Virus record (IMG/VR): IMGVR_UViG_3300044625_001067 | Span: 62,001 to 126,000 of that record | Strand: one strand, 5' to 3' | DNA: 64,000 nucleotides | Part shown: positions 2,977 to 61,342 of the stretch, piece by piece | Numbering within the stretch: position 1 is the stretch's first letter | Layout: the number at the start of each line of letters is the position of its first letter | Translations under genes and position numbers: made by a program | The notes under the pieces: model-generated | What the model was told of the DNA's origin: nothing | Databases searched by the model: none | Seen by the model: the letters and a program-made list of their open reading frames with translations, nothing else

Positions 2977-3022
2977 ATACTAGCGTGTTTGCTACGGGGA
3001 AGCAAGGGGCGGCTTCCCGCCC
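2977..3022 (-). promoter_or_regulatory. Repeated early promoter element (degenerate copy)
   Basis: TTGCTT-17-TAGTAT with upstream GC box. Confidence 0.55.
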
Positions 3023-3039
3023 TTACCCCCGGACCACAC

Positions 3040-3858
3040 TCACTTCGTGTTAAAAACACCCTCGGATAGGGAGAGCACGTTGGCACCGTTAATCAGAATC
3101 TTCTGAATACTGCCGTTTTTCATGGCTTCACGGAGAACCTCAAGACGTTGGTACTCAAGAGACTGCGAAGTCACTGTGGACGCCAGTGCCTTGTTTTCCT
3201 CGGCCTTAAGTTGAGCCGTTTCAGTCTTAACTTGCTGCTCTTTTAGACCAGATTGGGCGGCAACTACACGATTCACCGACGCCACCAATTCGTCTGGTAA
3301 GTCAGCTTTGCCTACGATGATGGAGTCGACGGTTATTTTACCATCAAGGCCGTTCTTTCGGAGAGCTTCGGACAGGTTGGTTTTGATTGTGTCTTGAATC
3401 TGTTCCAGGCTGCTGTTTACGGCTAGTGCGGGGAACTCATCGACAGATTGATTTACGGCGGATGTAATCAGCCTGGAAATGTAGCTGGACATTAGTTGAA
3501 GCTGACCATTTTCGGCAATCCCGTGATTAGTCAGATCGTAGTTGGTGAAGAACTCGTAAAGGGAGTTAGGGTTGATGCTGTATGTTACAGTAACATCCAT
3601 CTCTTTCATGATGGTGTTGTCCTTGGTCTTCGGGCGAAGGTCGTTTGCAGTTACCGTGATCTTTCGGGTGTTGAACACCTTAATGGATCCGAACCCGTCG
3701 TACTTAATGCCTGGTGTCAGAACCTCGTTTTTCACTTGGCCGTCGAAACCGACATAGAGCCCGTTTTCACCGGTGTTGATCGTAGTGAACTGACCAGCTG
3801 TGAGGGCGAGAAGGAGAGCACCGGCACCAACGCCGATACCAATTTTTGCGAGTGACAT
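3040..3858 (-). CDS. SPFH/Band 7/prohibitin family membrane protein
   Basis: N-terminal TM anchor, GENGLYV..G.V, KTKDN, C-terminal coiled coil. Confidence 0.85.
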   Translation of the reverse strand: MSLAKIGIGVGAGALLLALTAGQFTTINTGENGLYVGFDGQVKNEVLTPGIKYDGFGSIKVFNTRKITVTANDLRPKTKDNTIMKEMDVTVTYSINPNSLYEFFTNYDLTNHGIAENGQLQLMSSYISRLITSAVNQSVDEFPALAVNSSLEQIQDTIKTNLSEALRKNGLDGKITVDSIIVGKADLPDELVASVNRVVAAQSGLKEQQVKTETAQLKAEENKALASTVTSQSLEYQRLEVLREAMKNGSIQKILINGANVLSLSEGVFNTK

Positions 3859-3903
3859 TTTGAATGTGATTTTGAATGTGAGTGGTTTGGAATTAAGGCT
3901 GGG

Positions 3904-4065
3904 CTAGTCTTTAGTTACACCGGCGTAAATAAACGCACATGCAACAAAAAGGAGGAGTGCTAGCGGTACAATTTTGAGGAAAAACACCACTGGAAGCCCC
4001 CTCAAAAAGAGAATGAACAGGAGTAAAGACACTCCAGCAGCGACACCAAGAACTCGTATTAGCAT
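3904..4065 (-). CDS. Small two-helix membrane protein (not in ORF track)
   Basis: 53-aa ORF MLIRVLGVAAGVSLLLFILFLRGLPVVFFLKIVPLALLLFVACAFIYAGVTKD. Confidence 0.6.
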   Translation of the reverse strand: MLIRVLGVAAGVSLLLFILFLRGLPVVFFLKIVPLALLLFVACAFIYAGVTKD

Positions 4066-4111
4066 GTGGGGTTACAGGGTGGAGAACTTTTGTAATTGTG
4101 TCGCACGGCAA

Positions 4112-4456
4112 CTAAGCAATTTTCCAGTCTTCAGCGTCACGAAACTCGATGGACTCAGACCCGTCGTATTCCGTAACCCTAAACATAACCCCTTCAGGTA
4201 CCCAGTAAATTGAAAGTTGTCTCGCGCCATCACCGTAAAAGTAGGACTCAGGGTAAACGGACTCAACGTACTCTGGTATGGAGTCTCGGCGGTCGTCTTC
4301 AACCATGCTCACCAAGGTAGGGTCGTACAATAGAAAGTTTTCGAGACCGTCGTCACCATTGCCATCGCGGGAGTTCCAGGTGCTCCAACCCGCGCCATAG
4401 CCTGGGCTGTATAAAACGGCGACTTCACCGCCTCGAACTACTCTGTCAGCTTTCAT
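4112..4456 (-). CDS. Conserved phage hypothetical protein
   Basis: VAVLYSPGYGAGWSTWN and EYDGSES motifs typical of a widespread phage family. Confidence 0.75.
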   Translation of the reverse strand: MKADRVVRGGEVAVLYSPGYGAGWSTWNSRDGNGDDGLENFLLYDPTLVSMVEDDRRDSIPEYVESVYPESYFYGDGARQLSIYWVPEGVMFRVTEYDGSESIEFRDAEDWKIA

Positions 4457-4688
4457 TTCGGTTAAAGTGTGTTACAAGGAAGGTTTCTTGGTTTTCGTAG
4501 GCCTGAGCGAGAGCTTCGCCCTCAGCTTGAAGGAGCCTTACAAGGTCAAACTGTCCGCGATCAAGGAGGAGATGACATTGCACGGAAAGGTCCCATAGTC
4601 GAGTCTGAATTGCATCGCCAAGGGAAAACGCCTTACCATGTAAGGCAGTGTCGTAGGGGTTGGGGTTCATAAGTTAAGGGTTGGGAGA

Positions 4689-5426
4689 CTAAGCAAACTG
4701 AACAAGGGTCTGTTCTTCCAGGTTCCACACACAGAGGCGAGCGTGCGCCGGGTCAAAACTTTTCTGAGTGCTGCCACCCATCTGACCGTCGAGAACCAGG
4801 CTCTTCTCGCTCGTGTGAACGTGGTGGTAGTGCCCTGCGACACGAACCCAGGTCCGATCGCATTCCTCTTCCCACCAATAGACGCGAGTCTCATCTTGAG
4901 GGTACACCGCGCCGGGGCGGCGAGGGCCAAACAGCATGTAGTCCTTGGCTTTTCTCGTCACCTCGTTCACACGGTACACTCCAGTGTAAGACGGTGGAAC
5001 AAGAACCCACTTCGGAAACATCGCGTGAGCACAACGGTACTCTGTCCCTCTGGAATCTCGCAAGGCAACCCCGTAGGGAAAAGTTTCCAGCCAGGCAGAG
5101 ACTTCCTCAATAGGGATACCTGCGTCTGAGAAGTCTTGTACGGTACGCTCAAAGCCCTCTTTAAGAACCACGTTGTTCCCGCGAGCGTAACGCTCCAGCT
5201 TGTTTTGATGGTTGCTTCGAAGCACAATCGCCCCTTCTTCCACGGCTTGCCGAACGGCTTTGTACACACCTGCGCTGTCGCTTGTTTCCATGCGAGAGTC
5301 AAAGAGGTCGCCGAGGAAAATTGGTGTGCAATTTGCTCCTCGGCAATAATCGAGCGCTTTGAGCAGGGGCTTTCTCTGAGAGTGTAGGTCGCCGATGAAG
5401 GCAAAATTGGAAGTAACGTTATTCAT
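4689..5426 (-). CDS. Calcineurin-like metallophosphoesterase
   Basis: GDLH, GDLFD, SNHQ, CAHA, GHYH motifs. Confidence 0.9.
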   Translation of the reverse strand: MNNVTSNFAFIGDLHSQRKPLLKALDYCRGANCTPIFLGDLFDSRMETSDSAGVYKAVRQAVEEGAIVLRSNHQNKLERYARGNNVVLKEGFERTVQDFSDAGIPIEEVSAWLETFPYGVALRDSRGTEYRCAHAMFPKWVLVPPSYTGVYRVNEVTRKAKDYMLFGPRRPGAVYPQDETRVYWWEEECDRTWVRVAGHYHHVHTSEKSLVLDGQMGGSTQKSFDPAHARLCVWNLEEQTLVQFA

Positions 5427-5853: not shown

Positions 5854-5898
5854 AGTATAGCCCATTTGCCCCGAAAAGCAAAGGGGGAAAACCGTCCC
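5854..5898 (-). promoter_or_regulatory. Repeated early promoter element
   Basis: GGGACGGTTTTCC box, TTTGCT-17-TATACT. Confidence 0.7.
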
Positions 5899-6094
5899 CT
5901 TTACCTCTGGCTTGGGCTGTTCGACGTAAAATGTGCCCTTAAGCGAGCCATAATGGCCATGTTCGCCTTAGACAGAGCCATGTCCAAGGTAGCCTTTTCT
6001 CCGACCTTGGCTTCGGTGGTGGACGATCCTCGAAGCCGTAGAGCGGAAAGGCGACGAGCAGCACACGAGGCGATGTTTAACCACTGCAGCGAGG

Positions 6095-8845: not shown

Positions 8846-9979
8846 ATGAGAAATTGCTACACATACAGAGTGGGTTGGTCCCGGTTCAATAAGTACTACT
8901 ACGGAGTTAGATTCGCCAAAGGATGTCACCCTGCTGACCTTTGGGTTGCCTATTTCACCAGCTCCCGGCATGTAAAAGCATTTAGAAAAGTTCACGGGGA
9001 GCCAGATATCCTAGAAGTGAGAAAAACTTTTGGAGACGAACCTAAAAAGGCAGCCGAATGGGAACAAACTGTTTTACGAAGACTAAACATAGAGTTCAAC
9101 GAACTATACTTAAACAGAAGCCGAAAGAACGCTTTCGGGGCCAAGGGGGCGCCATGGAATGTGGGTAGAACCAAGGAGAATTGCCCCGTGACACATTTAA
9201 CTGCGGAGAAGATTAGCAAGACTAGAAAAGGTTTTAAAGCCTCAGAAGAAACTAAGAAGAAACTGTCTATGGCTGCAAAGGGAAGAGCCGAAGAAAATTC
9301 CTGGAAGCAGCTATTAAAAAGTCCAGCAATTAGAAACAGATTTCACTCCTATAAACATTTCTTAGTTGAGATAGAAAACCTATACGAGTCTTGTTGGGGT
9401 ATCGCGGAGGTCATTTCAAAAGCCCTGGGAGTAAACGTCAGAGGCGTTGCTAAAGCCCTAGAGCGCCTAAATCTGACTTCTTTGAACGACCAGCAGAGAA
9501 CTAAAGTGTATAATAAGTACGGGAACAGGTTCTCTAGTTACAGCGACTACTGCATAAGTATCTTGGTTTTACATCTCAAGGGCTACACTCCCAGTCAAAT
9601 TGGTAGTCAGTTGGATGTGAATGAATGCGGAGTGGGGAACCTTCTTCTCAGGGTTGATTTAACCCCAAACAAGGCCAAAACGGGACCGTCAAAGCCCGCT
9701 TTTAAGAAGGTACTGATTGCTGATGCTCTTGAAGCTAAAAGCACCACATTCACTCTTGAAGACAATCCCCTCCCGGAGAGTCTTATTGTTAAGTTGAGAG
9801 AAACCGTCTGCCATACCGAGGATCTCTTCCACACCCATATCCTTTATAGAGAAGCTTCCCAACACAGGGACGTGGCCCAAACCAAATTGATCGCAAAAGT
9901 TTTTCCTTTCCAGGGGGGTCATGTACCTCCCCATATCCGTAAGGTAGACATCAAAAACAAAGAACTTGAAGTCATTTAG
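8846..9979 (+). mobile_element. Free-standing GIY-YIG-like homing endonuclease gene with NUMOD3-like motif
   Basis: YTY..YYYGVR N-terminus, YFTSS, conserved E (AAEWE) and YLN, SEETKKKLSMAAKG; only large plus-strand ORF. Confidence 0.75.
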
Positions 9980-10768
9980 CTTGTAGATGTTTTGCTGGAT
10001 TTTTGGGCCTACAACTTCTCCCTGTACAGCCACATTGTCAAACCCTGCAGTCTTCAGTTTTTCTTCTAGATTGACTTTTCTAGCGACGGACCAATAAGTG
10101 TTATTATTATCCTCTTTTAGGTCTAAGTTACGGGAGCAAACTCCGAACTCTCCGTTGTTAAGGTACATCGTACAAGATGTACCCTCTAGTTTCTCCGTAA
10201 CTTCGTATACAACATTCTTGTATTCCCCCAGTTTGTCGTATAGAGATTGAACTCTCGGCTGATCCGTTTTGGTAATGTAGCTCGGGAAGTTTCCACGAAC
10301 TTGTCCCGCAAGGCAAGCGGGGACCGGAGCTTCCCACTTCTGAATGCCAAACTCTAGAGTGAAGTCTTCGCCTTCTTCCCACACACACTCGTCAACTCGG
10401 AGAGATCCCCTCCCCCCATAAGGTTCGGCTAGCGAAACAACGTAGAAGCTTGGAGAGATGTCTGAGAAGCGAAGTAGGAGACCCTGGGAGACTTGGCCAC
10501 GGAGCCGGACGGTTTTCAACCTTTCCCCCTTCACTCCATTGTACTCCCTTGGTTCCTTCCCCTTGGACAAGAACGGGGCAAGTTCATGGGGGATCCACGA
10601 GTCAATCTCGAAATAGATTGCAAGATCACCGGCTTGGAATTCCCCTCTCTTCACGACAACGGGCCAGCCACCACCCACGATGGCGCACTCAATTGCGTCG
10701 GCGTCCGGGATTGGGCGAATCTCCGTTACTTGTCGGACGGAGGCGAGTTTGCGTTCGATGTTTGCCAT
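9689..10768 (-). CDS. RNA ligase, DRB0094/Rnl5-like, with N-terminal OB domain
   Basis: RKLAS..I.PI.DADAIE N-terminus; ligase motifs EKLEG, GEVVG, FDV, EGIVF, FKSIS. Confidence 0.9.
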   Translation of the reverse strand: MANIERKLASVRQVTEIRPIPDADAIECAIVGGGWPVVVKRGEFQAGDLAIYFEIDSWIPHELAPFLSKGKEPREYNGVKGERLKTVRLRGQVSQGLLLRFSDISPSFYVVSLAEPYGGRGSLRVDECVWEEGEDFTLEFGIQKWEAPVPACLAGQVRGNFPSYITKTDQPRVQSLYDKLGEYKNVVYEVTEKLEGTSCTMYLNNGEFGVCSRNLDLKEDNNNTYWSVARKVNLEEKLKTAGFDNVAVQGEVVGPKIQQNIYKLNDFKFFVFDVYLTDMGRYMTPLERKNFCDQFGLGHVPVLGSFSIKDMGVEEILGMADGFSQLNNKTLREGIVFKSECGAFSFKSISNQYLLKSGL

Positions 10769-13431: not shown

Positions 13432-13454
13432 GGTTGCGTGCGTGGGCTGAAGTA

Positions 13455-13498
13455 ACTATACCGCTTTCCTGCCGGGAAGGCAAGGGGGGTGAACCGCC
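13455..13498 (-). promoter_or_regulatory. Repeated early promoter element
   Basis: TTGCCT-17-TATAGT. Confidence 0.8.
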
Positions 13499-14392
13499 TT
13501 AGTCCAATATCTCCCTACGAACTGAGGTCTGCAGCTTACTGATTGCGGCGAGTGCGGCAGTGTGATTGTCGCGAGAGGCTTTCATGGGTGTGGCTTTCTG
13601 TACCATGACCCAAATGGCGTCTAGATCTGATAGAACCTCCGCAGCGTTTTTCAGTGCGGGTTTCGTCCTATACTTCGCAATGTATAGTTTGATAGTATTC
13701 GTCACCCTCTTGTAAAGAGACAACTTTTCTGCTTTGCACTGGTCGAGAGTACCAATGAAAGGGGGAGACTTGGAAAAGTCCATGTCGTCAAACCCGGCGT
13801 ACTTCCCGTCGATCTTTGCAAATCGAATACCGCTGTGGGACGGGATATTGTAGTCTAAGCCATGAGCTTCGCAACAAGCTTTGAAGTCTCGGAGAGAAAT
13901 CGCATTGCGGTCTAAGGTGTATAGGTGTGCCTTGGTTGCGCATTGCGGAGAGTTCCACATAGACTGAATGTCTGGGTCGCCGGAGTTGGTACGAACCTCC
14001 ACCACCTCAAGTTTGACGGGATCCTTTTCCGTGCGAGACTCGCCGAACACCGGCTCCCACGTTTTGAGAAAACGCTTGTAGGCGAATTCGTCGTCGAGAT
14101 TCTCAAAGATGTAGCAGCTTGAGTACCCCTCTTCCGGGGTGCCTTTTGAAGCGAGATCGCTTTTCTGTTCCATGTACGACTCGACTGACAAAGTGCTACC
14201 AGTCTCGTTCTCATAATGCGTAACTGCGGGTTGAAACACGCGAACACGTAGGATGGTCGTAGGGTCCGACACAACGAAAGTGTTTGCCGTTACAGGGATT
14301 CCATCCACCTCAAGGCTGGCGGATGTGTGGCTTCTTTGAACAAGGTAGCTCCCCTCGTTCACAAGATGAGTGGCCTTCAGAGTGATTGACAC
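13499..14392 (-). CDS. Hypothetical phage protein
   Basis: 297-aa ORF exactly filling the space between two promoter elements. Confidence 0.75.
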   Translation of the reverse strand: MSITLKATHLVNEGSYLVQRSHTSASLEVDGIPVTANTFVVSDPTTILRVRVFQPAVTHYENETGSTLSVESYMEQKSDLASKGTPEEGYSSCYIFENLDDEFAYKRFLKTWEPVFGESRTEKDPVKLEVVEVRTNSGDPDIQSMWNSPQCATKAHLYTLDRNAISLRDFKACCEAHGLDYNIPSHSGIRFAKIDGKYAGFDDMDFSKSPPFIGTLDQCKAEKLSLYKRVTNTIKLYIAKYRTKPALKNAAEVLSDLDAIWVMVQKATPMKASRDNHTAALAAISKLQTSVRREILD

Positions 14393-14424
14393 TTTGGTAG
14401 GTTTCAGGTGTTTTGAACTAGTTT

Positions 14425-16282: not shown

Positions 16283-16327
16283 ACTATACCGCTTTCCTGT
16301 CGGAAAGGTAAGGGGGTAAACCGCCCC
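16283..16327 (-). promoter_or_regulatory. Repeated early promoter element
   Basis: TTACCT-17-TATAGT, hairpin CTTTCC-4-GGAAAG. Confidence 0.8.
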
Positions 16328-16596
16328 CTTTCAGAGTCTTACAGGAACAAGAGTGGCAGCCTCAGAGCGAGTGCGAGCTATCTCGTTGCAGTCGGCCTCA
16401 CTTAGGCCCGTCATACTCTGCAGTTCGTGGTCTTGCACTCCATCCAAAACGGTTACGAGTGCGCGAGCAAAACGTTCGGCTTTCACCTCTGCTTCCCCTC
16501 GCTTCTCGTTCTCGTACAAGACACGGTTTTCAAGCGTTGTAAGGAAATCGGATGCGTTAGTGGAATCCATTGTTTTTGGAGGAACTCAACTCATTT

Positions 16597-16660
16597 GGTA
16601 TACCGTTTCTGCCCCGCAGAAACAAGACGGAAAACAGAACGTTTAGGGCGGTTAACCCCC
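16597..16660 (-). promoter_or_regulatory. Repeated early promoter element
   Basis: TTGTTT-17-TATACC, hairpin GTTTCTGC-3-GCAGAAAC, distal GGTTAACC box. Confidence 0.7.
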
Positions 16661-19163: not shown

Positions 19164-19865
19164 TTAACTTTCTTTTTCATGGGGTAAGTTTAGCTCGTTT
19201 GATCCACGGAGGCAAGGGGGGGAAACCGTCTGCCCCGGCACGGTTAACCGTTTTCTGCTTACCCAGTCTCCGTAGCTTCCTTCAAAGTCCAACGGGTAAG
19301 GCTTCAGCACACTAAATCGCGCAGCTTCGTCCAAAGCGTCAAGTGCTTCAGTCCTGGCTAGGAAGATGACTGTATTCCACCCAGGGGATGTAATTTTTCC
19401 CTCAATATACTTTGCTCTTTTGTACACCCCTCTGTGAACGACTCCCCAGCATCTTCCGGAGCCTTCGCAAACTTTTGCATGAGACACCCACTTACGCCCC
19501 CGAAGACTAACCCCTCGTCTGGCGTCTGCAGGGACATCTAGTCCAATCAAGCCAGAGTCGGCTATCGTATAGGCCAGAAATGCGCCTTGGCTGGGAATAC
19601 CCTCTAGCAGGTGAGGTAGGGTGGTACCCTCAAAAGAAGATTTGAGTGCCCCGAATCTACACCTATCAAACAAAGCACCTTTGAGTATAGCACCATTAAA
19701 GTTGCAACGGCGAATGAGGGAGTGCCTAAAGTCAGCACCAGTTAAGTCAGTGAAGCTGAAATCAACACGCCAGAGTTTGGACCCGAAGAAAGTGCTGTAA
19801 GGCATATCGGACCCCGAAAAGTCCTTAGAAACAAGGTGTTTCCGGTGGAAATTAGACTCCCTCAT
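19164..19865 (-). CDS. Pentapeptide-repeat protein
   Basis: DFSGSDM/DFSFTDLTGADFRHS/NFNGAILKGALF repeats in the N-half. Confidence 0.8.
   Translation of the reverse strand: MRESNFHRKHLVSKDFSGSDMPYSTFFGSKLWRVDFSFTDLTGADFRHSLIRRCNFNGAILKGALFDRCRFGALKSSFEGTTLPHLLEGIPSQGAFLAYTIADSGLIGLDVPADARRGVSLRGRKWVSHAKVCEGSGRCWGVVHRGVYKRAKYIEGKITSPGWNTVIFLARTEALDALDEAARFSVLKPYPLDFEGSYGDWVSRKRLTVPGQTVSPPCLRGSNELNLPHEKES
19187..19250 (-). promoter_or_regulatory. Repeated early promoter element (two boxes)
   Basis: CGGTTAACCG and GACGGTTTCC boxes, TTGCCT-17-TAAACT, ATG 6 nt after the -10. Confidence 0.75.
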
Positions 19866-20959
19866 CCTTCTCCCCTGGTAGCTGCTTGCTCAACTTGTTG
19901 CTGCAGCACGTCGGCGGCTCGGATGAGCGAGGTAGACAGGCGCGGTCACCGCGTGCCAAGGATTGAAGAAACCTCGTTTAGGTCAATCACCAGCCCTTGC
20001 ATTTCCTCAGACATCGGCGCTGGCAGGGGGGTGGTGCGGCTCCAACGGGCTAGGACGGCGCAAGCGAATGACACTGCTTCGCCATACAAAGCAAAGTACT
20101 CCGCCACTTTGTCCCAAAGGTCGTATAGCTGTTTACCGCTCGGTCCCTCTCCCTCCGGATAAACCTTCAGGGCAGCCAGCTCGGCTTCCTGCTGCTGGAG
20201 CAGGGTGACGACAGAACGCAGAACACCACGGTGCAAATAATCTGCGATGCCATCCCCGTAATACAGGCGTGTCCCGTATGGCTGTTGTTCCCAGAAAGCG
20301 TCTGCACTGAGTAATCCCTCAATTCCGTGAGATCCCTTGAATACACCGTTATTGGTGAGCAACTCCCCCACTTCCATCGGCTCCGGCGCTGGCGGGGCGC
20401 ATTGCTGCTGGAGCAGGGTGGCTGGCGCTGGTGCTGGTACCGCAGCCGGCCATTCCGATGTTCGAATCCCGTGCTCCTTCATCACCGGGCGGATGGCGGC
20501 AAGGGCTTCGGTGCAGCGCAGCTCGGCCCATGTGACCTTTTCAGTGGCAGAGCACAAACGCCCAATTTCCCCCTCGGCAACATCCGCCAGGGCGGCCTCG
20601 GCCTGAAGCAAGGCATTGGCAACCGGGCTGTCCTTTACCGGGGCTTCTGGTGCTGGCGGGGTGGATTGGCCCCATCGGGCAAGAACAGCCAGCATCAGAT
20701 CAGACAGCTCAAGGTGAGCCGATTCCAGGGAGCCGCCAGATTTCAGCCATGTTGCCCAGGGCTCACGGCCACATGCGAAAGCGAGCATGCTCGCATGGTT
20801 TGGAATTGGCACATTCTCACTAGGCTCGGCATCTAGTGCAGCGGTAGCCTCATCAATGGCTTCGTTCATTAAGCCGACACTGAAGGAGTCAGCTGTGGCT
20901 TCAGCCACCTCGGTTAGCCTAACTAGAGCAGTGCGAATGTCAGGTGCAGGATTAGTCAT
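19862..20959 (-). CDS. Mosaic multi-module hypothetical protein with premature TGA near the C-terminus
   Basis: TGA at 19946-19948 is followed in frame by ...IRAADVLQQQ... and a TGA overlapping the next ATG (19862-19865). Confidence 0.65.
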
Positions 20960-21010
20960 GTTCCGGAGTGAAGGTGAGATTGAGGGGGTTATAGGGATGC
21001 TCACACCCAT

Positions 21011-21053
21011 ACTATATCTTTTTATTACGAAAAGGGTAAGGGGGAAACCGCCC
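21011..21053 (-). promoter_or_regulatory. Repeated early promoter element
   Basis: GGGCGGTTTCCC box, TTACCC-17-TATAGT. Confidence 0.7.
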
Positions 21054-21419
21054 TATAGGTCCTCAGGACCATGCAAGGGGGCGGAGGAAAGCTCAAGTAG
21101 TCTCTTCACAGTGTCTCCGTGACAACGCTTTGGCGCACAAAAGCAAATTAGCTCCAGGGACTTCACGCTCGGATCTTGAACAATCGCGAGAAACTCTTGA
21201 AACTGCGCAAGTTCGGCACCTTTCTGAAGTAGCCTTGGAGGCAACCACTCTTCGTAACCATCGCAGACGCGGTCTCTCTCGACCTGGCTAGAGTCCTTCA
21301 TCGGCAGCGGATTTCCAAGGGCAGTCCCTCGGTGAATAGCTCGGCGTACGACACCCTCGGGGGGGGGGCTTCGTCTCTCGCCCCAAGTGGTACTTGTTTA
21401 CAACTTTGATTTTTGACAC
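21053..21419 (-). pseudogene. DUF4326-family protein, frameshifted in a C10 tract
   Basis: IKVVNKYH N-terminus; removing one C from 21359-21368 gives IHRGTALGNPL...RDRVCDGY...LICFCAPKRCHGD. Confidence 0.8.
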
Positions 21420-23068: not shown

Positions 23069-23131
23069 ATTATAGCGTTGTTTTCCGAAGAAAACAAGGG
23101 TGGAAACCGCCGTTTTCCGGGGCGGTTTCCC
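23069..23131 (-). promoter_or_regulatory. Repeated early promoter element (distal box inverted)
   Basis: TTGTTT-17-TATAAT, hairpin TTGTTTTC-4-GAAAACAA. Confidence 0.8.
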
Positions 23132-23183
23132 CTCAACCCCCTGGAATGTGTTGAACTGAAGTGGGGGACACGACCATAAGTCC

Positions 23184-24782: not shown

Positions 24783-24837
24783 GGCAGCTTTAGGTGGGTG
24801 GGACCGTTGAGTTTTGTTTATCTGGGCAAGGTTGGGA

Positions 24838-25494: not shown

Positions 25495-25556
25495 ACTATA
25501 CCGGTTTTGCCTGAGCAAAACAAGCCGGGAAACCGGTCAAAGCAGGGCGGTTTCCC
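25495..25556 (-). promoter_or_regulatory. Repeated early promoter element
   Basis: TTGTTT-17-TATAGT, hairpin GTTTTGC-4-GCAAAAC. Confidence 0.8.
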
Positions 25557-26471
25557 AAATGACCTCAGACACAGGTCAGGGATGAAACAAGGGGAAACCG
25601 CAAAAGATGTGTTTCGTCTGCTTGTCTACGTGTTGAATTGAGTGCTTCGGTCCAAAAACTACAAGTCAATCCGGACCCCTTAACGTGGCATTCTGTGTCC
25701 CACTCACCTTTTCTCTTGCTGATCCAGCATTGGGCCTCAACTTCGTCTTCCGTTTTGTAGCACGCTATCGGGGGAACACCTCTTCCCCTCCAGTAAGCTG
25801 GGCAGTTCCGGCTTCCGTCATCCCCCATCTTAAACAGTTGGTGGTAGAAGAGAGACGGCATAAAATAAAAGTTTGGGCAGTGGGGAACTAACCACGCAAA
25901 TTCATCCATAACACAATAATAAGGCGGCCTTGAAGGAATTAGGTTAAACGATGTGTGGCCTTACGGGGCTTCGAGGCAACAACGTAGTAGTCGGGAACAC
26001 GGTCTGTGGGGTTCCCCGCATTCACTTCTGTAAACCTGTCGTTTGCCTCGCCGTAAGTTGTGTAAAACTCGGACCAGGACTCGCTTCCCCATCCTCGCTC
26101 AGACTCATGCAAGTCAACAATCCAAACATCTTGAGCTAAGCTTAAACCTTGTTCTTCGGTGATTCTTGCCATTTTACACTAGTGGGATGAATGTGAAGTT
26201 TAGGGGTAACAGGTCAGTTGCGGGTCTTAGCCCGAGGGACATGCTCTCGACGTGCCAGCTCTTCCTTGATTGCGGCTTTTTGGTGCTCAAACCGCTTAGT
26301 TGCGGAACCCTCTTCGTCTTCGTCGTAGGCGAAGCTGGAAAAGTTTGCTCGAAAGTATGTTAGCAACCTGTGAGTTGGCAATTTGAGAAGGGTTTCGAGT
26401 GAGTTGCGATTCGGGTCCATGCGAGTCTCAGGGGTTGGGTGATTTAGGTTGGGGTTGGGAGTGCGGGGCAA

Positions 26472-35215: not shown

Positions 35216-35478
35216 GGACTAACCTCAAGAGAATTACATTCAATGGTGAAAAACGGTGTTGAACGGGTAGGCAATATTGTGAATACAATCCCGAGCACTC
35301 TTGCAACATCTGCCACAAATCCCACGTCTACCTCGGAGCCACGCTCAATCTTTCGAAGAAGTTCTACGGGTATTTGTGCAGCAAACGCAATGTCCTGCTT
35401 GGACCATCCCTGAGAAAGCCGTGCTTCGCACAATTGAGTCCCAAATCGTTGGGCGTGGGTTGAGTCGTAGAAAATCAT
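35212..35478 (-). CDS. XRE-family HTH protein
   Basis: ARLSQGWSKQDIAFAAQI...KIERG...VARVLG. Confidence 0.8.
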   Translation of the reverse strand: MIFYDSTHAQRFGTQLCEARLSQGWSKQDIAFAAQIPVELLRKIERGSEVDVGFVADVARVLGIVFTILPTRSTPFFTIECNSLEVSP

Positions 35479-38124: not shown

Positions 38125-38195
38125 AACTGCGACTACTCTTATAAACAAACTTACCCCTAATGCACCCACGACGGGGGTGAGTTTTCAATGAGGAC

Positions 38196-39990: not shown

Positions 39991-40018
39991 TTGCGGTTTC
40001 GAGAGCTTAAGTAAGGGT

Positions 40019-40062
40019 ATTATACGTTATTTCAGAGTAGAAACAAGGGGGGAAACCGTCCC
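40019..40062 (-). promoter_or_regulatory. Repeated early promoter element
   Basis: TTGTTT-16-TATAAT, GGGACGGTTTCCC box. Confidence 0.7.
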
Positions 40063-40887
40063 AAACGAAAGGTCGTACAAAGTGCTCGCTATGAGCAAAA
40101 GTCTTTCGCTGTCGTGCAACCCCGAAACCCATCGCTTAGGAATAGCCTTGTAACCGTAGTAAGCACCTGCTAGCTGCCCCGTAATCGCAGCAACCGTGTC
40201 TGAGTCGTCCCCGTAGTTCACAGCCTGCAGGATGGCCTCTTCAAAGGACGAAGTTGACCCAAAGTGGTAGAGTGCGGCGTTTAAGGACTTCGGTGCGTAC
40301 CCGGAATTTTCAATTCCCTCCGGCGAGACTTCAGGTTTTCCCCCCGTGCCATTTAAGTATTGGTGCAGCAAACGACCGAGATCTTTGCATAGGTCGGATG
40401 CCAAGTGGCCATGGGTTGTTGATGATGACGCGTCACACGCTGCTACAGCGTCCTGCTCACTTGACTTGTGGTACACAATAGAAACGGGGGATAAACGCAT
40501 CAAAGACCCGTTTCCTTTCGAATTCTCCGGATAGAGACTCAAAGACCCCTCAACGAGAAAAGTCTCAATTGCACGAAGTGTTCCATTGCCGATGTCAAAA
40601 CAGACACCTGTTGAGCTGTTCCTTCCGTACTCGTACCAGTTGGAGTACCGACGCATTTGGTCTCCAAGATTGATCTGCCCATTGCAATGAATAAAAGACT
40701 CGGCAAGGCAAACAGCCTGCGATGTGTCGTCCGTCCAGTAGCCTGACGGCAGATTAAAGGGCCCCCCTGCTCGGTAACCTGTGACGGTCTCAAAGGTCCC
40801 CGGTGGAGAGAACTCCACTGGCGCACCCATCGCGTCACCGATCGCAAGGCCAATAAAGGCTCCGAGGCATTTGTCGAAAGTTGTCAT
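40027..40887 (-). CDS. ADP-ribosylglycohydrolase (DraG/ARH family)
   Basis: GLAIGDAMG, WTDDT, GNGSLMR, TTH, GDDSDTVAAITGQLAGA. Confidence 0.93.
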   Translation of the reverse strand: MTTFDKCLGAFIGLAIGDAMGAPVEFSPPGTFETVTGYRAGGPFNLPSGYWTDDTSQAVCLAESFIHCNGQINLGDQMRRYSNWYEYGRNSSTGVCFDIGNGTLRAIETFLVEGSLSLYPENSKGNGSLMRLSPVSIVYHKSSEQDAVAACDASSSTTHGHLASDLCKDLGRLLHQYLNGTGGKPEVSPEGIENSGYAPKSLNAALYHFGSTSSFEEAILQAVNYGDDSDTVAAITGQLAGAYYGYKAIPKRWVSGLHDSERLLLIASTLYDLSFGTVSPLVSTLK

Positions 40888-42384: not shown

Positions 42385-42715
42385 TGTAAGGGGGCCGAAA
42401 CCCCCGAGTTATGAGTCAGAGTGCGGTTGCTCAAACGGCAACGGCAATCCTCTCGAATTTGACGATGTTGTTAGCGTCTATTTTGTGCTTATGCAAGCGG
42501 CTTTCACTCAGGCGACATCTTTACCCTAGCGAGACCATGGCACCCCCTTGACTAGAGGTGGGAGTTTAACCCACAGTGACCCTGCCTTCTCAGTAAGTCG
42601 GAAGGTTGAAGAAGGGACGGTCACGTTCTCAAATGGAGGTGAGGGGATTCGAACCCCTGTATAGGGCACTATCTTCCAGAGCTACACCCAGTTTAATGTC
42701 GTGTGGTAGGACTGT
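42385..42715 (-). ncRNA. ssrA: Permuted two-piece tmRNA (outer ends approximate)
   Basis: T-arm AGGGGTTCGAATCCCCT plus CACCTCCA (ends 42634) precedes the 5' strand GGGGGTG (starts 42547), giving G3.U70; tag ORF 42431-42475 ANNIVKFERIAVAV*. Confidence 0.9.
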
Positions 42716-44959: not shown

Positions 44960-46102
44960 TCACCGGTTCTCAATACAACCGAGACTTTGAAATTTTTCCA
45001 CAGTCTCAGCACAGAGAGTGTTGATGAGTTGGTCATCTACCGTGTTCGGCAAGACGCACTCGTTCTTCCCCACGTGCTCAGCCTCCTTAAAGAGCTGAGT
45101 TACAATTGTGCTTAGTTCGTCATACGTAATCCTGCCGTACTTAATGTCCAGAAGAAAATCTGCGTCCCCAACCAACTTTCTATTCACAAGAAGCTCTCCG
45201 GTTCGCATTCCCTCAATGGCCATTTTCATAAGTCGAACACAGTGGCTGGCGTTCTTCCCGTCGTACCCACAGGCCCGCTCAATTTCGGATCGCTTCACAT
45301 TCCGATTAGTCAACCAATCTTGGTAATTACTCCACCGTTTTAAATCTGACCGGTACTGTTGGCTTGAGTGGAGAAGGGCCATGTACTCATCGCTTGCTCT
45401 CGTGATTTTCTGTGTTTCATTGAAGCACTCCTCCGGTAAGACACTCTGCTTCAAAATTCCTTTCCAATCAACACGGTCGTTGAGAAGCTCGTACAGCTCG
45501 ACTGAAGGTTGGTAGTACTCGATTCTGTCTTTAATCAGCAAGTACAAGTACTCGATGAAAGACTCGATTTGAGACGGGGTTAAGCTCGGGGAAGAGACAC
45601 CGTAGTCCTCCCACTCCGGTCGCCGTGTTGGAGGGTTTAAGAGCCATTTGCGGTGAGTCTCCATTTTCTTGATCTGGGACCTTGCGTACTGAACGAATGT
45701 GCCAGAGATTCTCCTGGAAATTAGCTTCCTCCGGTTGTCAATTAGCGACTGCCCCAGAAAGTCAAGGTACAGGTAGCTGTCGGGAGTCTGCCAGAGCATC
45801 TCCAAAATGTTGGGGTTTTGCGACCGCAACAAGCTCAGGTACCTGCGAATGCCGTACACCACTGAATCCGAGTTATCTAACTCAGGGAATCTAGAGTTGA
45901 ACTCACCCTCGTCTTGTTGCTCCCCTACCCACCCCTTATCCTTTTGCTCAAATGTTTCGAGAGTGGTGTAAAACCGCTGTGGCGCCACACAGATTCCCTT
46001 AAAGTCCAAGTCGGACATCTCGGTGTTGAGGCCATAGGCGTGGCTGCCTGACTTGCAAAACAGGATCATCCCGTCTTCAATTTCTTTTCGTGTAATTGTC
46101 AT
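44960..46102 (-). CDS. Pol-beta-superfamily nucleotidyltransferase (RlaP/YcgL-like)
   Basis: GSHAYGLNTEMSDLDFKG, NPNILEML, GYDGKNASHCVRL. Confidence 0.88.
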   Translation of the reverse strand: MTITRKEIEDGMILFCKSGSHAYGLNTEMSDLDFKGICVAPQRFYTTLETFEQKDKGWVGEQQDEGEFNSRFPELDNSDSVVYGIRRYLSLLRSQNPNILEMLWQTPDSYLYLDFLGQSLIDNRRKLISRRISGTFVQYARSQIKKMETHRKWLLNPPTRRPEWEDYGVSSPSLTPSQIESFIEYLYLLIKDRIEYYQPSVELYELLNDRVDWKGILKQSVLPEECFNETQKITRASDEYMALLHSSQQYRSDLKRWSNYQDWLTNRNVKRSEIERACGYDGKNASHCVRLMKMAIEGMRTGELLVNRKLVGDADFLLDIKYGRITYDELSTIVTQLFKEAEHVGKNECVLPNTVDDQLINTLCAETVEKFQSLGCIENR

Positions 46103-52786: not shown

Positions 52787-52807
52787 CCCTTTAGAGTGTA
52801 ACAACTA

Positions 52808-59103: not shown

Positions 59104-59165
59104 ACTATACCGCTTTTGCTCTGTGAGGGAAAGCGGGGAAACCGTCCGAGTTAGGGCGGTTATCC
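59104..59165 (-). promoter_or_regulatory. Repeated early promoter element
   Basis: TTTCCC-17-TATAGT, ATG 6 nt after the -10. Confidence 0.7.
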
Positions 59166-59331: not shown

Positions 59332-59405
59332 CGCCCTGTGCAGGATTTGAACCTGCGACATTCTCTTTAGGAAAGAGATGTTCTAATCCACTGAACTAAC
59401 AGGGC
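59332..59405 (-). tRNA. tRNA-Arg(CCT)
   Basis: Cloverleaf; anticodon arm TCTCT-TTCCTAA-AGAGA; T loop GTTCAAATC; no encoded CCA. Confidence 0.92.
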
Positions 59406-59477
59406 TTTTGGCTTAAGTCCGTATGCTTCTTGCAAAGGGCAAACCGGACTCAGTACGATGGTAACCTTATGGGGTTA

Positions 59478-59551
59478 CGCCCCCTAGAGGATTCGAACCT
59501 CTGACACCACGGGCCGAAACCGTGTGCTCTAATCCGCTGAGCTAAGGGGGC
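59478..59551 (-). tRNA. tRNA-Arg(TCG)
   Basis: Cloverleaf; anticodon arm CACGG-TTTCGGC-CCGTG; GTTCGAATC. Confidence 0.92.
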
Positions 59552-59837
59552 TTGGCTGCATAATGTGCCGGGGGTGACTACCCCATTTGACGTGCAAATC
59601 TTCCGGCGGAACTCACCTTTACCCCTGGGTGGGAATAGACGGGGAAGTGAATTTGCCCATCCAAGAAAACTAACCTGTAGTGGTTCTTAACAAGGAAGTT
59701 TTCGAAGTTTGTAGCGTTCAGAGTCTCAATTCGCCTTAGCGTCTCAAGGGTTTTGCAATGATTTTGTAGCAGAGTAACTTGCCTCTGCAACGCCACGTTT
59801 TTGTTGTGCAATTCCACGTTTTGTTTTCTCATGTGCG

Positions 59838-60371
59838 TCACCACCGACTTGTAGTTGGTTTGGGTGCAAGTCCCAGGATTTCAAGATCGTCCTTGCTTAA
59901 GGAAGCCAAAAGTTCGGCTTTCCGCTCCCGAACTCGTTTCTCCTCGTCCTTTGCTCGTTGAACCTCGCTCAGGAACTCATTTGCGTCCCAGAGGTCGGAA
60001 TTAAGGGAATTCAGCTCTTGTTGTGACTGAGGACCCTGCCGAGAGAATTTCACACCACATTCACCCATTGGGCGTGAAGTGTCAAGTGTAAGGGCGAATC
60101 GATCCGGTGTTACAGCCTCACCGAACTCACTGTAGGTGATTCGTTCAAGGATGGGCTCCACCCCAAGCTCTCTGGCTTTAGCCATAAGGCTCAGGATGGT
60201 CCACGGCAACTCTGCTGTCGCCGCAGCCAAATTCGCCTCAAGATCCTTTTGCTGCTGCGCAGCTTTCTCAGCCTTTAGTTGAGCTTTTCGTTCTGCTCGG
60301 TCTTTACTAGCTGCCCACTGGGCAACTGTTTGAGTGGTTTCTTCGTCAGAAATTTGGATGGGGTTGGTCAT
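59838..60371 (-). CDS. Hypothetical protein
   Basis: ORF behind promoter 60397; ends with A.LS..DL..LGL. Confidence 0.7.
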   Translation of the reverse strand: MTNPIQISDEETTQTVAQWAASKDRAERKAQLKAEKAAQQQKDLEANLAAATAELPWTILSLMAKARELGVEPILERITYSEFGEAVTPDRFALTLDTSRPMGECGVKFSRQGPQSQQELNSLNSDLWDANEFLSEVQRAKDEEKRVRERKAELLASLSKDDLEILGLAPKPTTSRW

Positions 60372-60396
60372 TGGTTCGACTGGCTCGACTGAATTA

Positions 60397-60461
60397 ATCA
60401 TACCGTTTCTGCAGAGCGAAAACAAGCGGGGAAACCGTCCCAGATGAAACGGTTTACCGCC
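60397..60461 (-). promoter_or_regulatory. Repeated early promoter element (two boxes)
   Basis: TTGTTT-17-TATGAT. Confidence 0.8.
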
Positions 60462-60845
60462 CTCTCACCCCCGAAGCTACTCAGGAAGCAACCGCAACGG
60501 TAGGAACTAAGGAAGTGTCCCGACCCGCTTGAGCCTTCATTGCAGAGCGAGCACGAAGCATCGCCTGAGCCTGCAGAGCTGCGTCGTTGACGGTTAGCTG
60601 CAGGGCGGAATGGCGACTGGTGTAGGAGCCGTATGAGCGCCCGTACTTGCGGTTCCACTCATCTTGGCGTTCTTGCGGCCAGACGTAAGAGAACACAGGA
60701 AGCTCTTCAATGCTTCTTTGAGACTCTTTAATTTCCATTTTACGAGTGCGCTGACGCTCGCTGAGCTGAGCGTAGGTAGCTTGCCATTCGGCAACTTCAC
60801 GCAGGTATGTGTCGCGGTCTTGCATTGTTTTGTAAGGTTGGTTAA

Positions 60846-60918
60846 CACCGGCAGAGGGATTTGAACCCCCGACATCAAGCTTAGAAGGCTCGCGTTCTGT
60901 CCGCTGAACTATGCCGGT
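60846..60918 (-). tRNA. tRNA-Arg(TCT)
   Basis: Cloverleaf; anticodon arm CGAGC-CTTCTAA-GCTTG. Confidence 0.9.
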
Positions 60919-61275
60919 TTGCTCGAGGTGGGTTACACGGTGTCCCCCACCTGATTGGTTCTAACTTAGCGCATTATGCACCGGGGTACTCTTCAAGGTA
61001 GCCCTTGTACCAGTCCTGGGCAGCCCCTGAAATAACCCCTCAACCATATTCTTTAGGATCCAGAGCTGGCGTTCAGGAAACGCTGTCATTTTCAGATGAG
61101 TGTATCTGAGTGAGCCCCAGCTCCTCAGGAACTTGGGGTTTTGCTCTGGGAACAAAGTCAGGAGCAAGGAGTCCACCAGGGGGCGTTTCTCGAACCCGCG
61201 AGTCATGCTCGAAAGAGTTTCTTCGATGGCGGTGAGCTGGGTGGGGCTGAGGCTGAGGTTGTTTTCCATGAACTA

Positions 61276-61342
61276 ACTATACCGCTTTTGCCCCGTAGAA
61301 ACAAGGGGGTAAACCGCCCTCGAATAGGAGGGTAAACCGCCC
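61276..61342 (-). promoter_or_regulatory. Repeated early promoter element (two boxes)
   Basis: Two GGGCGGTTTACC boxes, TTGTTT-17-TATAGT, ATG 6 nt after the -10. Confidence 0.8.

What the first reader, a model, noticed from the sequence alone, without database searches (positions are those of the whole stretch)
2977..61342. About 32 copies of a composite promoter/operator element partition the region into gene cassettes
Seen: on the minus strand the consensus is [GGCGGTTAACCG]-~9-[GGGCGGTTTCCC]-few nt-TTGYYT-17 bp-TATART, always co-oriented with the genes and just upstream of a start, about one per 2 kb. The two GGCGGTT boxes are direct repeats ~23 bp apart (about two helical turns). The proximal box abuts the -35, and boxes are sometimes inverted (23069, 25495, 33343). 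Established: -35/17/-10 is sigma70-type geometry, and T4-type phages have repeated promoter-stem-loop (PeSL) cassettes implicated in module shuffling. Inference: a single activator or repressor regulon controls the whole early region, and the repeats may also serve as recombination points.
Basis: partly seen in the sequence, partly recalled or inferred. Interest (0 to 1): 0.75.

Follow-up and report, generated by a model that had tools for sequence, protein, structure and literature searches.

The report
Repeated early-promoter cassettes of jumbo cyanophage
The repeats are about 90 near-identical early promoters (29 in this window) of an uncultured freshwater jumbo cyanophage. Each has a conserved GC-rich protein-binding-type box beside the -35 and an unusual self-complementary spacer, so they look like a PeSL-like promoter-cassette system rather than a new kind of element.

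Summary
A position matrix finds 29 elements in the window, all on the minus strand. It finds about 95 in the 277-kb genome and none in the reversed-sequence control. Each element is a sigma70-type promoter: TTGYYT, then 17 bp, then TATAgT, with G at -14 and a purine seven nt after the -10. The start codon lies at +1 (leaderless) or 16-27 nt downstream, with no Shine-Dalgarno sequence.

A GC box (GGGRCGGTTTCCC) abuts the -35 and is centred near -42.5. A second box lies 22 bp upstream in only about half the copies. The boxes show sequence conservation without covariation. CGGT never changes between orthologues, and relatives such as S-CBWM1 carry a perfect GGGCGG-W4-CCGCCC palindrome at the same place. 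This points to a sequence-specific protein site, not a terminator hairpin.

New here: the 17-bp spacer is a covarying inverted repeat. Late genes use a different motif (GGGTAAAR).

Some cassette indels between relatives cross over inside the box, as with PeSLs, but the enrichment is modest. No binding factor was identified, and no bacterial or archaeal genome searched carries the composite.

Verdict: a new variant of a known kind. The regulon idea is plausible but unproven.

The parts
2977..3025 (-). weak element: inverted-type box GGGCGGGAAGCCGCCCC, then TTGCTT, then a poor -10
   Evidence: core matrix 12.5 bits
5433..5481 (-). element: perfect palindromic box, TTGCCT-17-TATAGT, ATG 6 nt after the -10 (leaderless)
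   Evidence: 48.0 bits, stem 5/8
5854..5902 (-). element: proximal box, TTTGCT-17-TATACT
   Evidence: 46.0 bits
7806..7879 (-). element with distal and proximal boxes, spacer stem 7/8
   Evidence: 59.5 bits
11680..11753 (-). element with distal and proximal boxes, CTTTCC/GGAAAG spacer stem
   Evidence: 40.9 bits
13143..13191 (-). element: proximal box, TTTCTC/GAGAAA spacer stem
   Evidence: 53.8 bits, stem 7/8
13455..13503 (-). element. Metatranscriptome contigs break at 13442-13447, next to the predicted +1 at 13448
   Evidence: 44.9 bits; contig ends
14425..14473 (-). element. Relatives carry a 350-nt insertion at 14408-14411, just past +1
   Evidence: 51.8 bits
16283..16331 (-). element. 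Contigs of relatives diverge at 16270 and at 16315-16328
   Evidence: 50.9 bits
16597..16670 (-). element with distal box, spacer stem 8/8. G002 has a 1.2-kb insertion at 16599-16626
   Evidence: 35.1 bits
19187..19260 (-). element with distal box and leaderless ATG. It is the downstream partner of the cassette deletion seen in G001
   Evidence: 35.3 bits; alignment A2
21011..21058 (-). degenerate element: box GGGCGGTTTCCCCC, TTACCC-17-TATAGT. It is the upstream partner of the cassette deletion
23069..23142 (-). element with an inverted distal box (GGGGAAACCGCCCC)
   Evidence: 42.3 bits, stem 6/8
25495..25568 (-). element with an inverted distal box. An indel boundary in G001 and G002 lies at 25535, inside the proximal box
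   Evidence: 48.5 bits
26807..26855 (-). element: proximal box only
   Evidence: 59.3 bits
27988..28061 (-). element with palindromic distal box CGGTTAACCG
   Evidence: 51.4 bits
29257..29330 (-). element with distal box, -10 TAAAAT
   Evidence: 48.5 bits
33343..33391 (-). weak element with an inverted proximal box, TTTACC-17-TATAGT
   Evidence: 12.6 bits
34060..34108 (-). element with perfect palindromic box, spacer stem 8/8. It drives an XRE-family helix-turn-helix (HTH) gene
   Evidence: 50.7 bits
35994..36038 (-). variant element of S-CBWM1 type: box, TTTACC-17-TAAGCT
40018..40066 (-). element with a 16-bp spacer
   Evidence: 31.3 bits
44359..44432 (-). near-consensus element with both boxes
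   Evidence: 62.5 bits
47637..47710 (-). element with both boxes, TTTCTC/GAGAAA stem
   Evidence: 52.3 bits
49030..49078 (-). element: proximal box, -10 TAAAGT
   Evidence: 42.9 bits
51473..51521 (-). element: proximal box, weak spacer stem
   Evidence: 43.0 bits
52722..52795 (-). element with both boxes. A replacement boundary in G001 lies at 52800
   Evidence: 40.3 bits
57269..57342 (-). element with distal box CCGGATAACCGG, stem 8/8. It is the downstream edge of a cassette replaced in G001
   Evidence: 55.2 bits
57785..57833 (-). element, stem 8/8. It is the upstream edge of the same replaced cassette
   Evidence: 61.2 bits
59104..59177 (-). element with distal box, followed by ATGGAAAACACCGCCCC (a box-like inverted copy at +1)
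   Evidence: 48.8 bits
60397..60470 (-). element with both boxes
   Evidence: 55.1 bits
61276..61349 (-). element with both boxes, leaderless ATGGAAAAC start
   Evidence: 60.2 bits

Best explanation
The elements are the early and accessory-gene promoters of an uncultured freshwater jumbo cyanophage of the S-CBWM1-like lineage.

Shown from sequence:
- Each element has full sigma70-type geometry: TTGYYT, 17 bp, TATAgT, G at -14, and a purine +1 seven nt after the -10.
- Each sits at a fixed distance from a start codon. The mRNAs are either leaderless or have 16-27-nt leaders without a Shine-Dalgarno sequence.
- About 95 copies cover genome positions 4-171 kb, including the tRNA clusters and the gene for one phage sigma factor.
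- The structural and replication block uses a different motif (GGGTAAAR).

Inferred: the host RNA polymerase with its primary sigma reads these promoters at the start of infection. A phage sigma factor made from one of them then switches on the late class.

The GC box abutting the -35 (centre -42.5/-43.5) and its optional twin 22 bp upstream (centre -64.5) are most likely a binding site for one sequence-specific, probably dimeric, protein. That protein would co-ordinate all these promoters at once. The positions are those of a Class II plus Class I activator site. Every sigma70-type promoter found carries the box, so a phage-made factor could only act after some basal transcription. I therefore favour a phage-lineage factor that modulates or shuts off early transcription, or a virion-borne or host factor that boosts it. 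Its identity is unknown.

The covarying inverted repeat that fills the spacer is selected as a nucleic-acid structure. It is most likely a DNA hairpin or cruciform that makes promoter strength depend on DNA topology. This is inference only.

Because the copies share 12-60 bp of identity, they also act as occasional crossover points. These add, delete or swap promoter-plus-gene cassettes, as PeSLs do in T4-like phages.
For: Specificity and distribution:
- The motif is real and specific.
- It is restricted to the early region and co-oriented with genes on both strand blocks.

Promoter geometry:
- 17-bp spacer in 74 of 87, and ATG at 6 nt or 22-33 nt after the -10.
- Purine at position 7 after the -10 in 70 of 72.
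- In about 104 orthologue comparisons, CGGT of the box, G at -14 and TATA never change, against about 8% background divergence.

Temporal classes:
- A separate late motif lies 28-36 nt before starts in 171-277 kb.
- There are two phage sigma genes, one preceded by an element.

The box as a sequence motif:
- Pairing beyond the core equals the shuffled expectation.
- 61 of 66 strict boxes lie inside elements, with none standing alone at gene ends.
- Positions and phase are fixed.
- The same GGGCGG-W4-CCGCCC box abuts the -35 in S-CBWM1 and other uncultivated viral genomes (UViGs), although their -35 and -10 differ.

Spacer structure:
- 45 of 87 have a perfect stem of >=5 bp, against about 5% of shuffles, with 43 distinct stems.
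- Covariation z reaches 7.9.
- In the tool test, 72.8% of cells pair against 64.2 +/- 1.7, and 31 cells change on both sides against 17, both 0 of 500 shuffles. Slid controls give 44-55%.
- Five compensatory double changes occur between orthologues.

Recombination:
- A crossover inside the box removes a 1.8-kb cassette in G001.
- 20 of 109 breakpoints fall in the 77 element-bearing gaps.
- About 16 of 53 large indels have a boundary at an element.
Against: - There is no transcription-start data. The only RNA evidence is metatranscriptome contigs of 90-97% relatives. Their ends at the elements could equally be assembly breaks at repeats.
- No box-binding protein was found. The XRE-family HTH genes in the phage have no S-CBWM1 counterpart, and S-CBWM1 has no HTH_3 hit. 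The Mor family is absent.
- The only recognisable shared transcription proteins are two sigma factors.
- In relatives the box is a perfect GC hairpin followed by TTT, which also fits a terminator.
- The distal box is no more conserved than background between orthologues.
- Stem mismatches (50 G.U against 114 A.C) do not show on which strand or molecule the hairpin acts.
- Breakpoint enrichment is modest, and most indels lie elsewhere.
Confidence: 0.6

Rival explanations
1. Classical PeSL reading. The boxes are stem-loops that terminate or insulate transcription of the upstream cassette, and the T-rich -35 doubles as the U-tract. No dedicated DNA-binding factor is involved.
For: - In S-CBWM1 and other relatives the box is a perfect 6-bp GC stem with a 4-nt centre in either orientation, followed by TTTAC.
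- Some copies here also form it, and two are picked up by the terminator scan.
- PeSLs have exactly this stem-loop-then-promoter order (PMC4122927).
Against: - In this genome only 20 of 87 proximal boxes fold at <= -8 kcal/mol, and only 16 of 87 look terminator-like.
- The left arm (CGGT) is invariant while the right arm drifts.
- There is no covariation.
- The stem sequence, not just the pairing, is fixed across a lineage whose TerL is only 60% identical, unlike PeSL stems.
- No stand-alone boxes occur at gene ends or at the convergent junction.
- Terminator-like sites are not enriched (16 against 22 expected).
Confidence: 0.2
2. The box is read by RNA polymerase itself. It would be an upstream (UP-like or extended -35) element for the alpha C-terminal domains or sigma region 4 of the picocyanobacterial enzyme, with no separate factor.
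For: - The A/T centre of the proximal box lies at -42.5, where the proximal UP subsite is centred in E. coli (established knowledge).
- The second box is on the same helix face.
- No shared transcription factor was found.
- All promoters carry the box, so nothing has to be made first.
Against: - The most conserved bases are G/C (CGG), not the A/T centre.
- UP elements are A/T-rich.
- The composite and the double box are absent from 185,579 species genomes, including cyanobacteria.
Confidence: 0.12
3. The elements are not host-sigma early promoters. They are a middle class read by one of the two phage-encoded sigma factors, or they depend wholly on a phage-made activator.
For: - There are two phage sigma genes but only one obvious late motif.
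- The -35 matches TTGACA only at TTG.
Against: - The geometry is that of primary-sigma promoters.
- A phage sigma gene is itself preceded by such an element.
- No box-less sigma70-type promoter exists to start the cascade.
- The phage sigmas are small proteins with regions 2 and 4 only. Such proteins usually read different hexamers.
Confidence: 0.1
4. The repeats are primarily mobile or recombination sites: an integron-like or MITE-like cassette system served by a dedicated recombinase or structure-specific nuclease that recognises the box and hairpin. On this view their promoter activity is secondary.
For: - There is a crossover inside the box.
- Contigs of relatives diverge exactly at element edges.
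- The hairpin covaries.
- HNH nucleases are present in the region.
Against: - Position and orientation relative to start codons are strict.
- The -10 and +1 are conserved.
- Breakpoint enrichment is only about 1.7-fold.
- No recombinase was linked to the elements.
Confidence: 0.05

Closest known systems
PeSLs (promoter-early stem-loops) of T4-like myoviruses (Arbiol et al. 2010, PMC2839356; Comeau et al. 2014, PMC4122927)
   Same: - Dozens of near-identical composite cassettes lie between small accessory genes.
- A sigma70-like promoter has a palindromic element immediately upstream of the -35.
- They are concentrated in the plastic part of the genome.
- Indels and replacements between close relatives cross over in the repeats.
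   Different: - The host phage is not T4-like (Mu-like portal, S-CBWM1-like TerL).
- The upstream element is fixed in sequence and asymmetric here, and is a poor terminator in most copies.
- A second phased box is present in about half the copies.
- The spacer itself is a covarying hairpin.
- There is no Shine-Dalgarno sequence, and many starts are leaderless.
Class II / Class I activator-dependent sigma70 promoters (CRP/FNR/NtcA at -41.5; phage Mu Mor and C at -43.5)
   Same: - A 16-bp dyad lies at -42.5/-43.5, overlapping the upstream edge of a weak -35.
- A second site lies two helical turns upstream.
   Different: - No activator has been identified, and the Mor family is absent.
- The site sequence is unlike any I know (from memory, and a literature string search found nothing).
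- The -10 and spacing are already near-optimal.
Extended-consensus early promoters of lytic phages (T4 early promoters with upstream A-tracts; T5, T7 A1-A3)
   Same: - Many copies of a strong host-type promoter with conservation far beyond the two hexamers.
- They are used to capture host polymerase at the start of infection.
   Different: - The upstream conservation is GC-rich and palindromic in origin, not an A/T-rich UP element.
- The spacer is structured.
Promoters controlled by hairpin or cruciform extrusion (the synthetic promoter of Horwitz and Loeb 1988; N4 virion-polymerase hairpin promoters). Both recalled from memory.
   Same: - A short inverted repeat (5-8-bp stem, mostly 3-nt loop) lies inside the promoter.
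- Stem size is similar to the N4 hairpins.
   Different: - Here the hairpin is centred at about -24, between the -35 and -10 of a sigma70-type promoter.
- The loop sequence is not conserved.
- No N4-like polymerase is evident.
- No natural sigma70 promoter family with such a spacer is known to me.

Membership tests
sigma70-type (primary sigma) promoter | -35 and -10 hexamers with 17 +/- 1 bp spacing | tested here: met
   TTGYYT/TTTNNN and TATAgT; spacer 17 bp in 74, 16 bp in 7 and 18 bp in 6 of 87. The -35 matches the consensus only at TTG.
sigma70-type (primary sigma) promoter | purine start 6-8 nt after the -10, and conservation of the key -10 bases | tested here: met
   Purine at position 7 in 70 of 72. 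TATA and G at -14 are unchanged in about 104 orthologue comparisons.
sigma70-type (primary sigma) promoter | transcripts actually start there | not testable with these tools
   Only assembled metatranscriptome contigs of relatives were available. Their ends at 13442-13447 fit the predicted +1 at 13448 but could be breaks at repeats.
PeSL (promoter-early stem-loop) | strong sigma70-like early promoter repeated many times in hyperplastic regions | tested here: met
   About 95 copies in the 4-171 kb accessory region, and only 2 in the structural block.
PeSL (promoter-early stem-loop) | stem-loop just upstream of the promoter that is an effective terminator | tested here: inconclusive
   A palindrome-derived box is always there, but only 16 of 87 are terminator-like. 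There is no covariation. Termination was not measured.
PeSL (promoter-early stem-loop) | indels and replacements between close relatives cross over in the elements | tested here: met
   A hybrid element in G001 shows a crossover in the box. Breakpoint density is about 1.7-fold that of other gaps. About 16 of 53 large events touch an element. The effect is modest.
PeSL (promoter-early stem-loop) | Shine-Dalgarno sequence and start codon at the 3' end; T4-like phage | tested here: not met
   There is no Shine-Dalgarno sequence; starts are leaderless or have short C/A-rich leaders. The phage has a Mu-like portal and S-CBWM1-like TerL.
Class II activator-dependent promoter | dyad site centred near -41.5 to -43.5, overlapping the -35 | tested here: met
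   CGGT lies at -47/-48 and the core centre at -42.5/-43.5 in 79 of 87.
Class II activator-dependent promoter | a cognate activator protein | tested here: inconclusive
   No candidate is shared across the lineage. The host could not be searched for the single 16-bp site.
intrinsic terminator | stable GC stem followed by a U-tract, found at gene ends | tested here: not met
   16 of 87 qualify. Boxes never stand alone. The generic scan finds 16 sites against 22 expected.
N4-type hairpin promoter | hairpin centred near -12, conserved loop, virion RNA polymerase | tested here: not met
   The hairpin is centred 11 nt after the -35 start, at about -24. Loops vary. No such polymerase was seen among the large ORFs, but this was not searched exhaustively.

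The most novel reading that the evidence does not exclude
The covarying inverted repeat filling the spacer of about 90 sigma70-type promoters may be a functional DNA hairpin or cruciform switch. Together with the lineage-specific GC box and an unrecognised phage protein, it could form a previously undescribed way of timing a whole early regulon. In that reading, promoter geometry would be made or broken by DNA topology, or by a structure-specific factor, as the injected genome changes state. The same structure might also be the handle by which promoter-gene cassettes are moved.
Probability: 0.15. Interest if true: 0.85.

Novelty: new variant of a known kind. Interest (0 to 1): 0.6.

Why it matters
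This is an unusually clean regulatory code in an uncultured jumbo cyanophage lineage that is widespread in lakes. Two promoter classes, early composite and late GGGTAAAR, can be read straight from the sequence. That allows temporal annotation of several hundred unknown genes.

The fixed box at a Class II position predicts a single, still unknown regulator. The structured spacer is a design not described for natural sigma70 promoters. The leaderless starts are rare in cyanobacterial systems.

A cultured relative, S-CBWM1 on Synechococcus CBW1002, carries the box, so the predictions can be tested at the bench. The crossover inside the box extends PeSL-type modular shuffling beyond T4-like phages.

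Tried and rejected
- **RNA-structure reading of the upstream boxes.** Pairing equals the shuffled expectation, and whole-element folds are not better than shuffles (z -0.4 to -2.9).
- **Sense-RNA hairpin for the spacer.** Wobble statistics do not favour it.
- **Generic terminator scan.** It gave no enrichment.
- **Host regulon.** The composite pattern and the double-box pattern each gave 0 hits in 185,579 species genomes.
- **ECF-type promoter hidden in the two boxes, on either strand.** By inspection the spacing is 14 bp, not 16-17, so I rejected it.
- **Candidate factors.** The homologue of the S-CBWM1 'DNA binding protein' is a pyrimidine-dimer glycosylase. The 'transcription elongation' homologue looks SprT-like by eye. 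Mor is absent. The three XRE-family HTH proteins and one RHH protein have no S-CBWM1 homologue, and S-CBWM1 has no HTH_3 hit. Ten shared or candidate ORFs scanned, six of them small proteins with no Pfam hit; none shows a DNA-binding domain.
- **Complex prediction.** I did not run it because no candidate had a reasonable prior.
- **Literature.** A string search for the box found nothing relevant.
- **Phage collection.** The megablast search found no close relative.
- **Metatranscriptome reads.** They gave contigs of relatives only, with no start sites.

Full report
**What the window is.** The window is positions 62001-126000 of a single 277,244-bp IMG/VR virus record. The record is linear, estimated 98% complete, and about 50% GC. 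Its large terminase is 60% identical to that of Synechococcus phage S-CBWM1, with the S-TIM5 group next. It has a Mu-like portal and protease, a family-A polymerase with a mitochondrial-type exonuclease domain, and a ribonucleotide reductase containing an intein. It also has homologues of S-CBWM1 psbA and hli. Lake-water metagenomes and metatranscriptomes hold it or close relatives. It is therefore an uncultured freshwater jumbo cyanophage and not a T4-type phage.

GGCGGTT occurs 34 times in the window, against 8.7 +/- 3.0 in shuffles. An iterated position matrix finds 87 elements in the genome. A core matrix from the proximal box to the -10 finds 95 at >=12 bits and none in the reversed sequence. 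Of these, 29 are in the window, all on the minus strand, which is one per 2.0 kb.

Genome-wide, the elements lie on the plus strand at 4-44 kb and 144-171 kb, and on the minus strand at 49-143 kb. They are always co-oriented with the genes. Only two lie in the 171-277 kb block, and one of those sits directly upstream of a phage sigma-factor gene.

**Promoter anatomy.**
- The spacer is 17 bp in 74 of 87 elements.
- The base 7 nt after the -10 is a purine in 70 of 72 (A 41, G 29). The two bases after the -10 are A/T-rich.
- The first ATG of a real ORF lies either 6 nt after the -10 (at least 11 cases, so the A of ATG is the predicted +1 and the mRNA is leaderless) or 22-33 nt after it (about 45 cases). 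These are C/A-rich leaders without a Shine-Dalgarno sequence.
- Between this genome and three long relatives (G001-G003, 85-98% identical), background divergence is about 8%. CGGT of the proximal box, G at -14 and TATA of the -10 show no change in about 104 comparisons. The hairpin loop is the most variable part, and the distal box is no better conserved than background.

This is strong internal evidence for working sigma70-type promoters, although no start site has been mapped.

**A separate late class.** Upstream of genes in 171-277 kb there is a different motif, RGGGTAAAR. It occurs 38 times on the coding strand, mostly 28-36 nt before the start. The phage encodes two small sigma factors, as S-CBWM1 does. 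The simplest reading is that host polymerase reads the composite promoters early, and that a phage sigma factor made from one of them drives the late class. This temporal order is inferred, not observed.

**The boxes.**
- The proximal CGGT starts 12 nt (61 cases) or 13 nt (18 cases) upstream of the -35. This puts the 10-bp core centre at -42.5/-43.5.
- A distal box is present in only 41 of 87 elements: 25 palindromic (CGG-W4-CCG), 10 forward and 6 inverted. It is exactly 22 bp upstream, centred at -64.5.
- Extending the putative stems outward gives pairing equal to the shuffled expectation, so there is no covariation.
- Folds of whole elements are not better than shuffles.
- Only 20 of 87 proximal boxes fold at <= -8 kcal/mol, and 16 of 87 look terminator-like.
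- 61 of 66 strict boxes lie inside elements, and none stands alone at a gene end or at the convergent junction.
- In S-CBWM1 and in other uncultivated viral genomes, including a complete 279-kb one, the same place is occupied by a perfect GGGCGG-W3M-CCGCCC palindrome. It directly abuts TTTACn, TTTGCn or TTGnnn, followed by 17 bp and a -10 that differs between phages (TAAGCT, TAAAGT or TATAnT). The A/T centre occurs in either orientation.

A stem whose sequence, not just its pairing, is fixed across a lineage this divergent, and whose upstream half is the constrained half, fits sequence-specific protein recognition better than a generic terminator. The geometry is that of Class II plus Class I activator sites.

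**No binding factor was found.** The composite pattern and the double-box pattern are absent from 185,579 bacterial and archaeal species genomes. No recognisable transcription factor other than the two sigma factors is shared with S-CBWM1. The Mor family is absent. The XRE-family HTH and RHH proteins of this phage have no S-CBWM1 counterpart.

- From the G of TTG to the C before GGTATAGT, the spacer is an inverted repeat centred 11 nt after the -35 start.
- 45 of 87 elements have a perfect stem of >=5 bp, against about 5% of shuffles. There are 43 distinct stems and mostly 3-nt loops, for example GTTTCTGC/GCAGAAAC, CTTTCC/GGAAAG and TTTCTC/GAGAAA.
- Column pairs covary, with z of 7.9, 7.3, 4.3 and 4.1.
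- On the 28 window copies with a 17-bp spacer, the pair-counting tool gives 72.8% paired against 64.2 +/- 1.7, and 31 both-side changes against 17 +/- 3.5. Both beat 500 of 500 shuffles. Slid controls give 44-55%.
- Orthologues show five compensatory double changes. By my own rough estimate about 1.5 would be expected by chance.
- Mismatches are 50 G.U against 114 A.C. A sense-strand RNA hairpin is therefore not favoured, and the strand or molecule cannot be assigned.

A protein operator cannot explain variable but complementary inner bases, so a nucleic-acid structure is being selected. I think a DNA hairpin or cruciform that couples promoter strength to topology is the most likely role. This is inference only.

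**Cassettes and recombination.** A viral-contig scan found the exact core pattern in 40 stretches from about 25 freshwater records, all relatives of this phage.
- Against G001-G003 there are 109 alignment breakpoints in 1-171 kb. Twenty fall in the 77 element-bearing gaps (11.8 kb), 22 in the 158 other gaps (22.3 kb), and 67 in genes. That is about 1.7-fold per nucleotide over other gaps.
- Of 53 indels or replacements of >=150 nt, about 16 have a boundary within 75 nt of an element.
- The clearest case is window 19228-21040, a two-gene cassette flanked by elements and absent from G001. The single G001 element is a hybrid whose crossover lies inside GGTTTCCCCC.
- A cassette between the elements at 57297 and 57813 is replaced in G001.
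- Metatranscriptome contigs of relatives diverge exactly at the edges of elements 13483, 14453, 16311 and 16625. These could be de Bruijn-graph breaks at repeats.

The PeSL-like role is therefore real but accounts for only a minority of events.

**Comparison with known systems.** PeSLs are composite terminator-promoter cassettes of T4-like phages, with the stem-loop just upstream of a sigma70-like promoter. They are implicated in modular shuffling (PMC2839356, PMC4122927). The present elements work like PeSLs in distribution and in recombination. They fail several membership features:
- The phage is not T4-like.
- There is no Shine-Dalgarno sequence.
- The upstream element is a fixed-sequence, asymmetric, poor terminator.
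- There is a second phased box.
- The spacer is structured.

I file them as a new variant of a known kind.

**Confidence.**
- That these are early sigma70-type promoters: about 0.85.
- That the box is a protein site rather than a terminator: about 0.6.
- That the spacer structure acts at the DNA level: about 0.35.
- That the elements are a major driver of cassette exchange: about 0.3.

Noticed in passing
whole window (genome 45600-143642): The 98-kb segment that contains the window is inverted in this record, and in a 100%-identical record from another sample (G005). In G001, G002 and eight other relatives, 45600 is joined to 143642 and all genes run one way. The junctions are precise, with no repeat or element at them.
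   Followed up: partly
window 42431-42689 (-): A permuted (two-piece) tmRNA gene scores 67.9 bits against RF04321. Most of it lies in a 416-nt stretch that is absent from relative G001.
   Followed up: partly
window 37204-38169 (-): A 321-aa ORF matches the ADP-ribosyltransferase exoenzyme family (PF03496, 1.2e-13). The 1.16-kb cassette is absent from G001, G002 and G003. T4 uses such enzymes to modify RNA polymerase, but no link to the promoters was tested.
   Followed up: no
window 59332-62732; genome 40-46 kb and 130-142 kb: The genome has more than 45 tRNA genes. The tRNA clusters are driven by a sub-class of the same promoter (TTTCGCC...GGCGAAA spacer). Each is followed by a conserved leader of about 70 nt that begins AAAGGGGTGGTTGAGAGAGCTTCGC and contains a UUCG hairpin. 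Its function is unknown.
   Followed up: partly
genome 171-277 kb (outside the window): The late and structural genes share a different upstream motif, RGGGTAAAR, 28-36 nt before the start. A few of these are preceded by a box plus TTTACG.
   Followed up: partly
window 59104-59132, 61276-61304 and about 8 other elements genome-wide: Leaderless starts often read ATGGAAAAC(A)CC(GCCCC). This resembles an inverted copy of the box placed at +1. It could be a coding constraint (MEN...) or a third site.
   Followed up: no
window 33668-34036 (-), 35212-35478 (-); genome 170575-170841 (+): There are three small XRE-family helix-turn-helix proteins. One is HigA-like and is encoded by the last early gene before the late block. 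None has an S-CBWM1 homologue.
   Followed up: partly
window 134-1612, 9689-10768, 23670-24902, 30868-32382, 44960-46102: The cassettes carry an RNA-repair and NAD set: two RNA ligases, an RlaP-type nucleotidyltransferase, a nicotinate phosphoribosyltransferase and a DUF2828/DUF7788 protein. This suggests a tRNA-repair or counter-defence theme.
   Followed up: no
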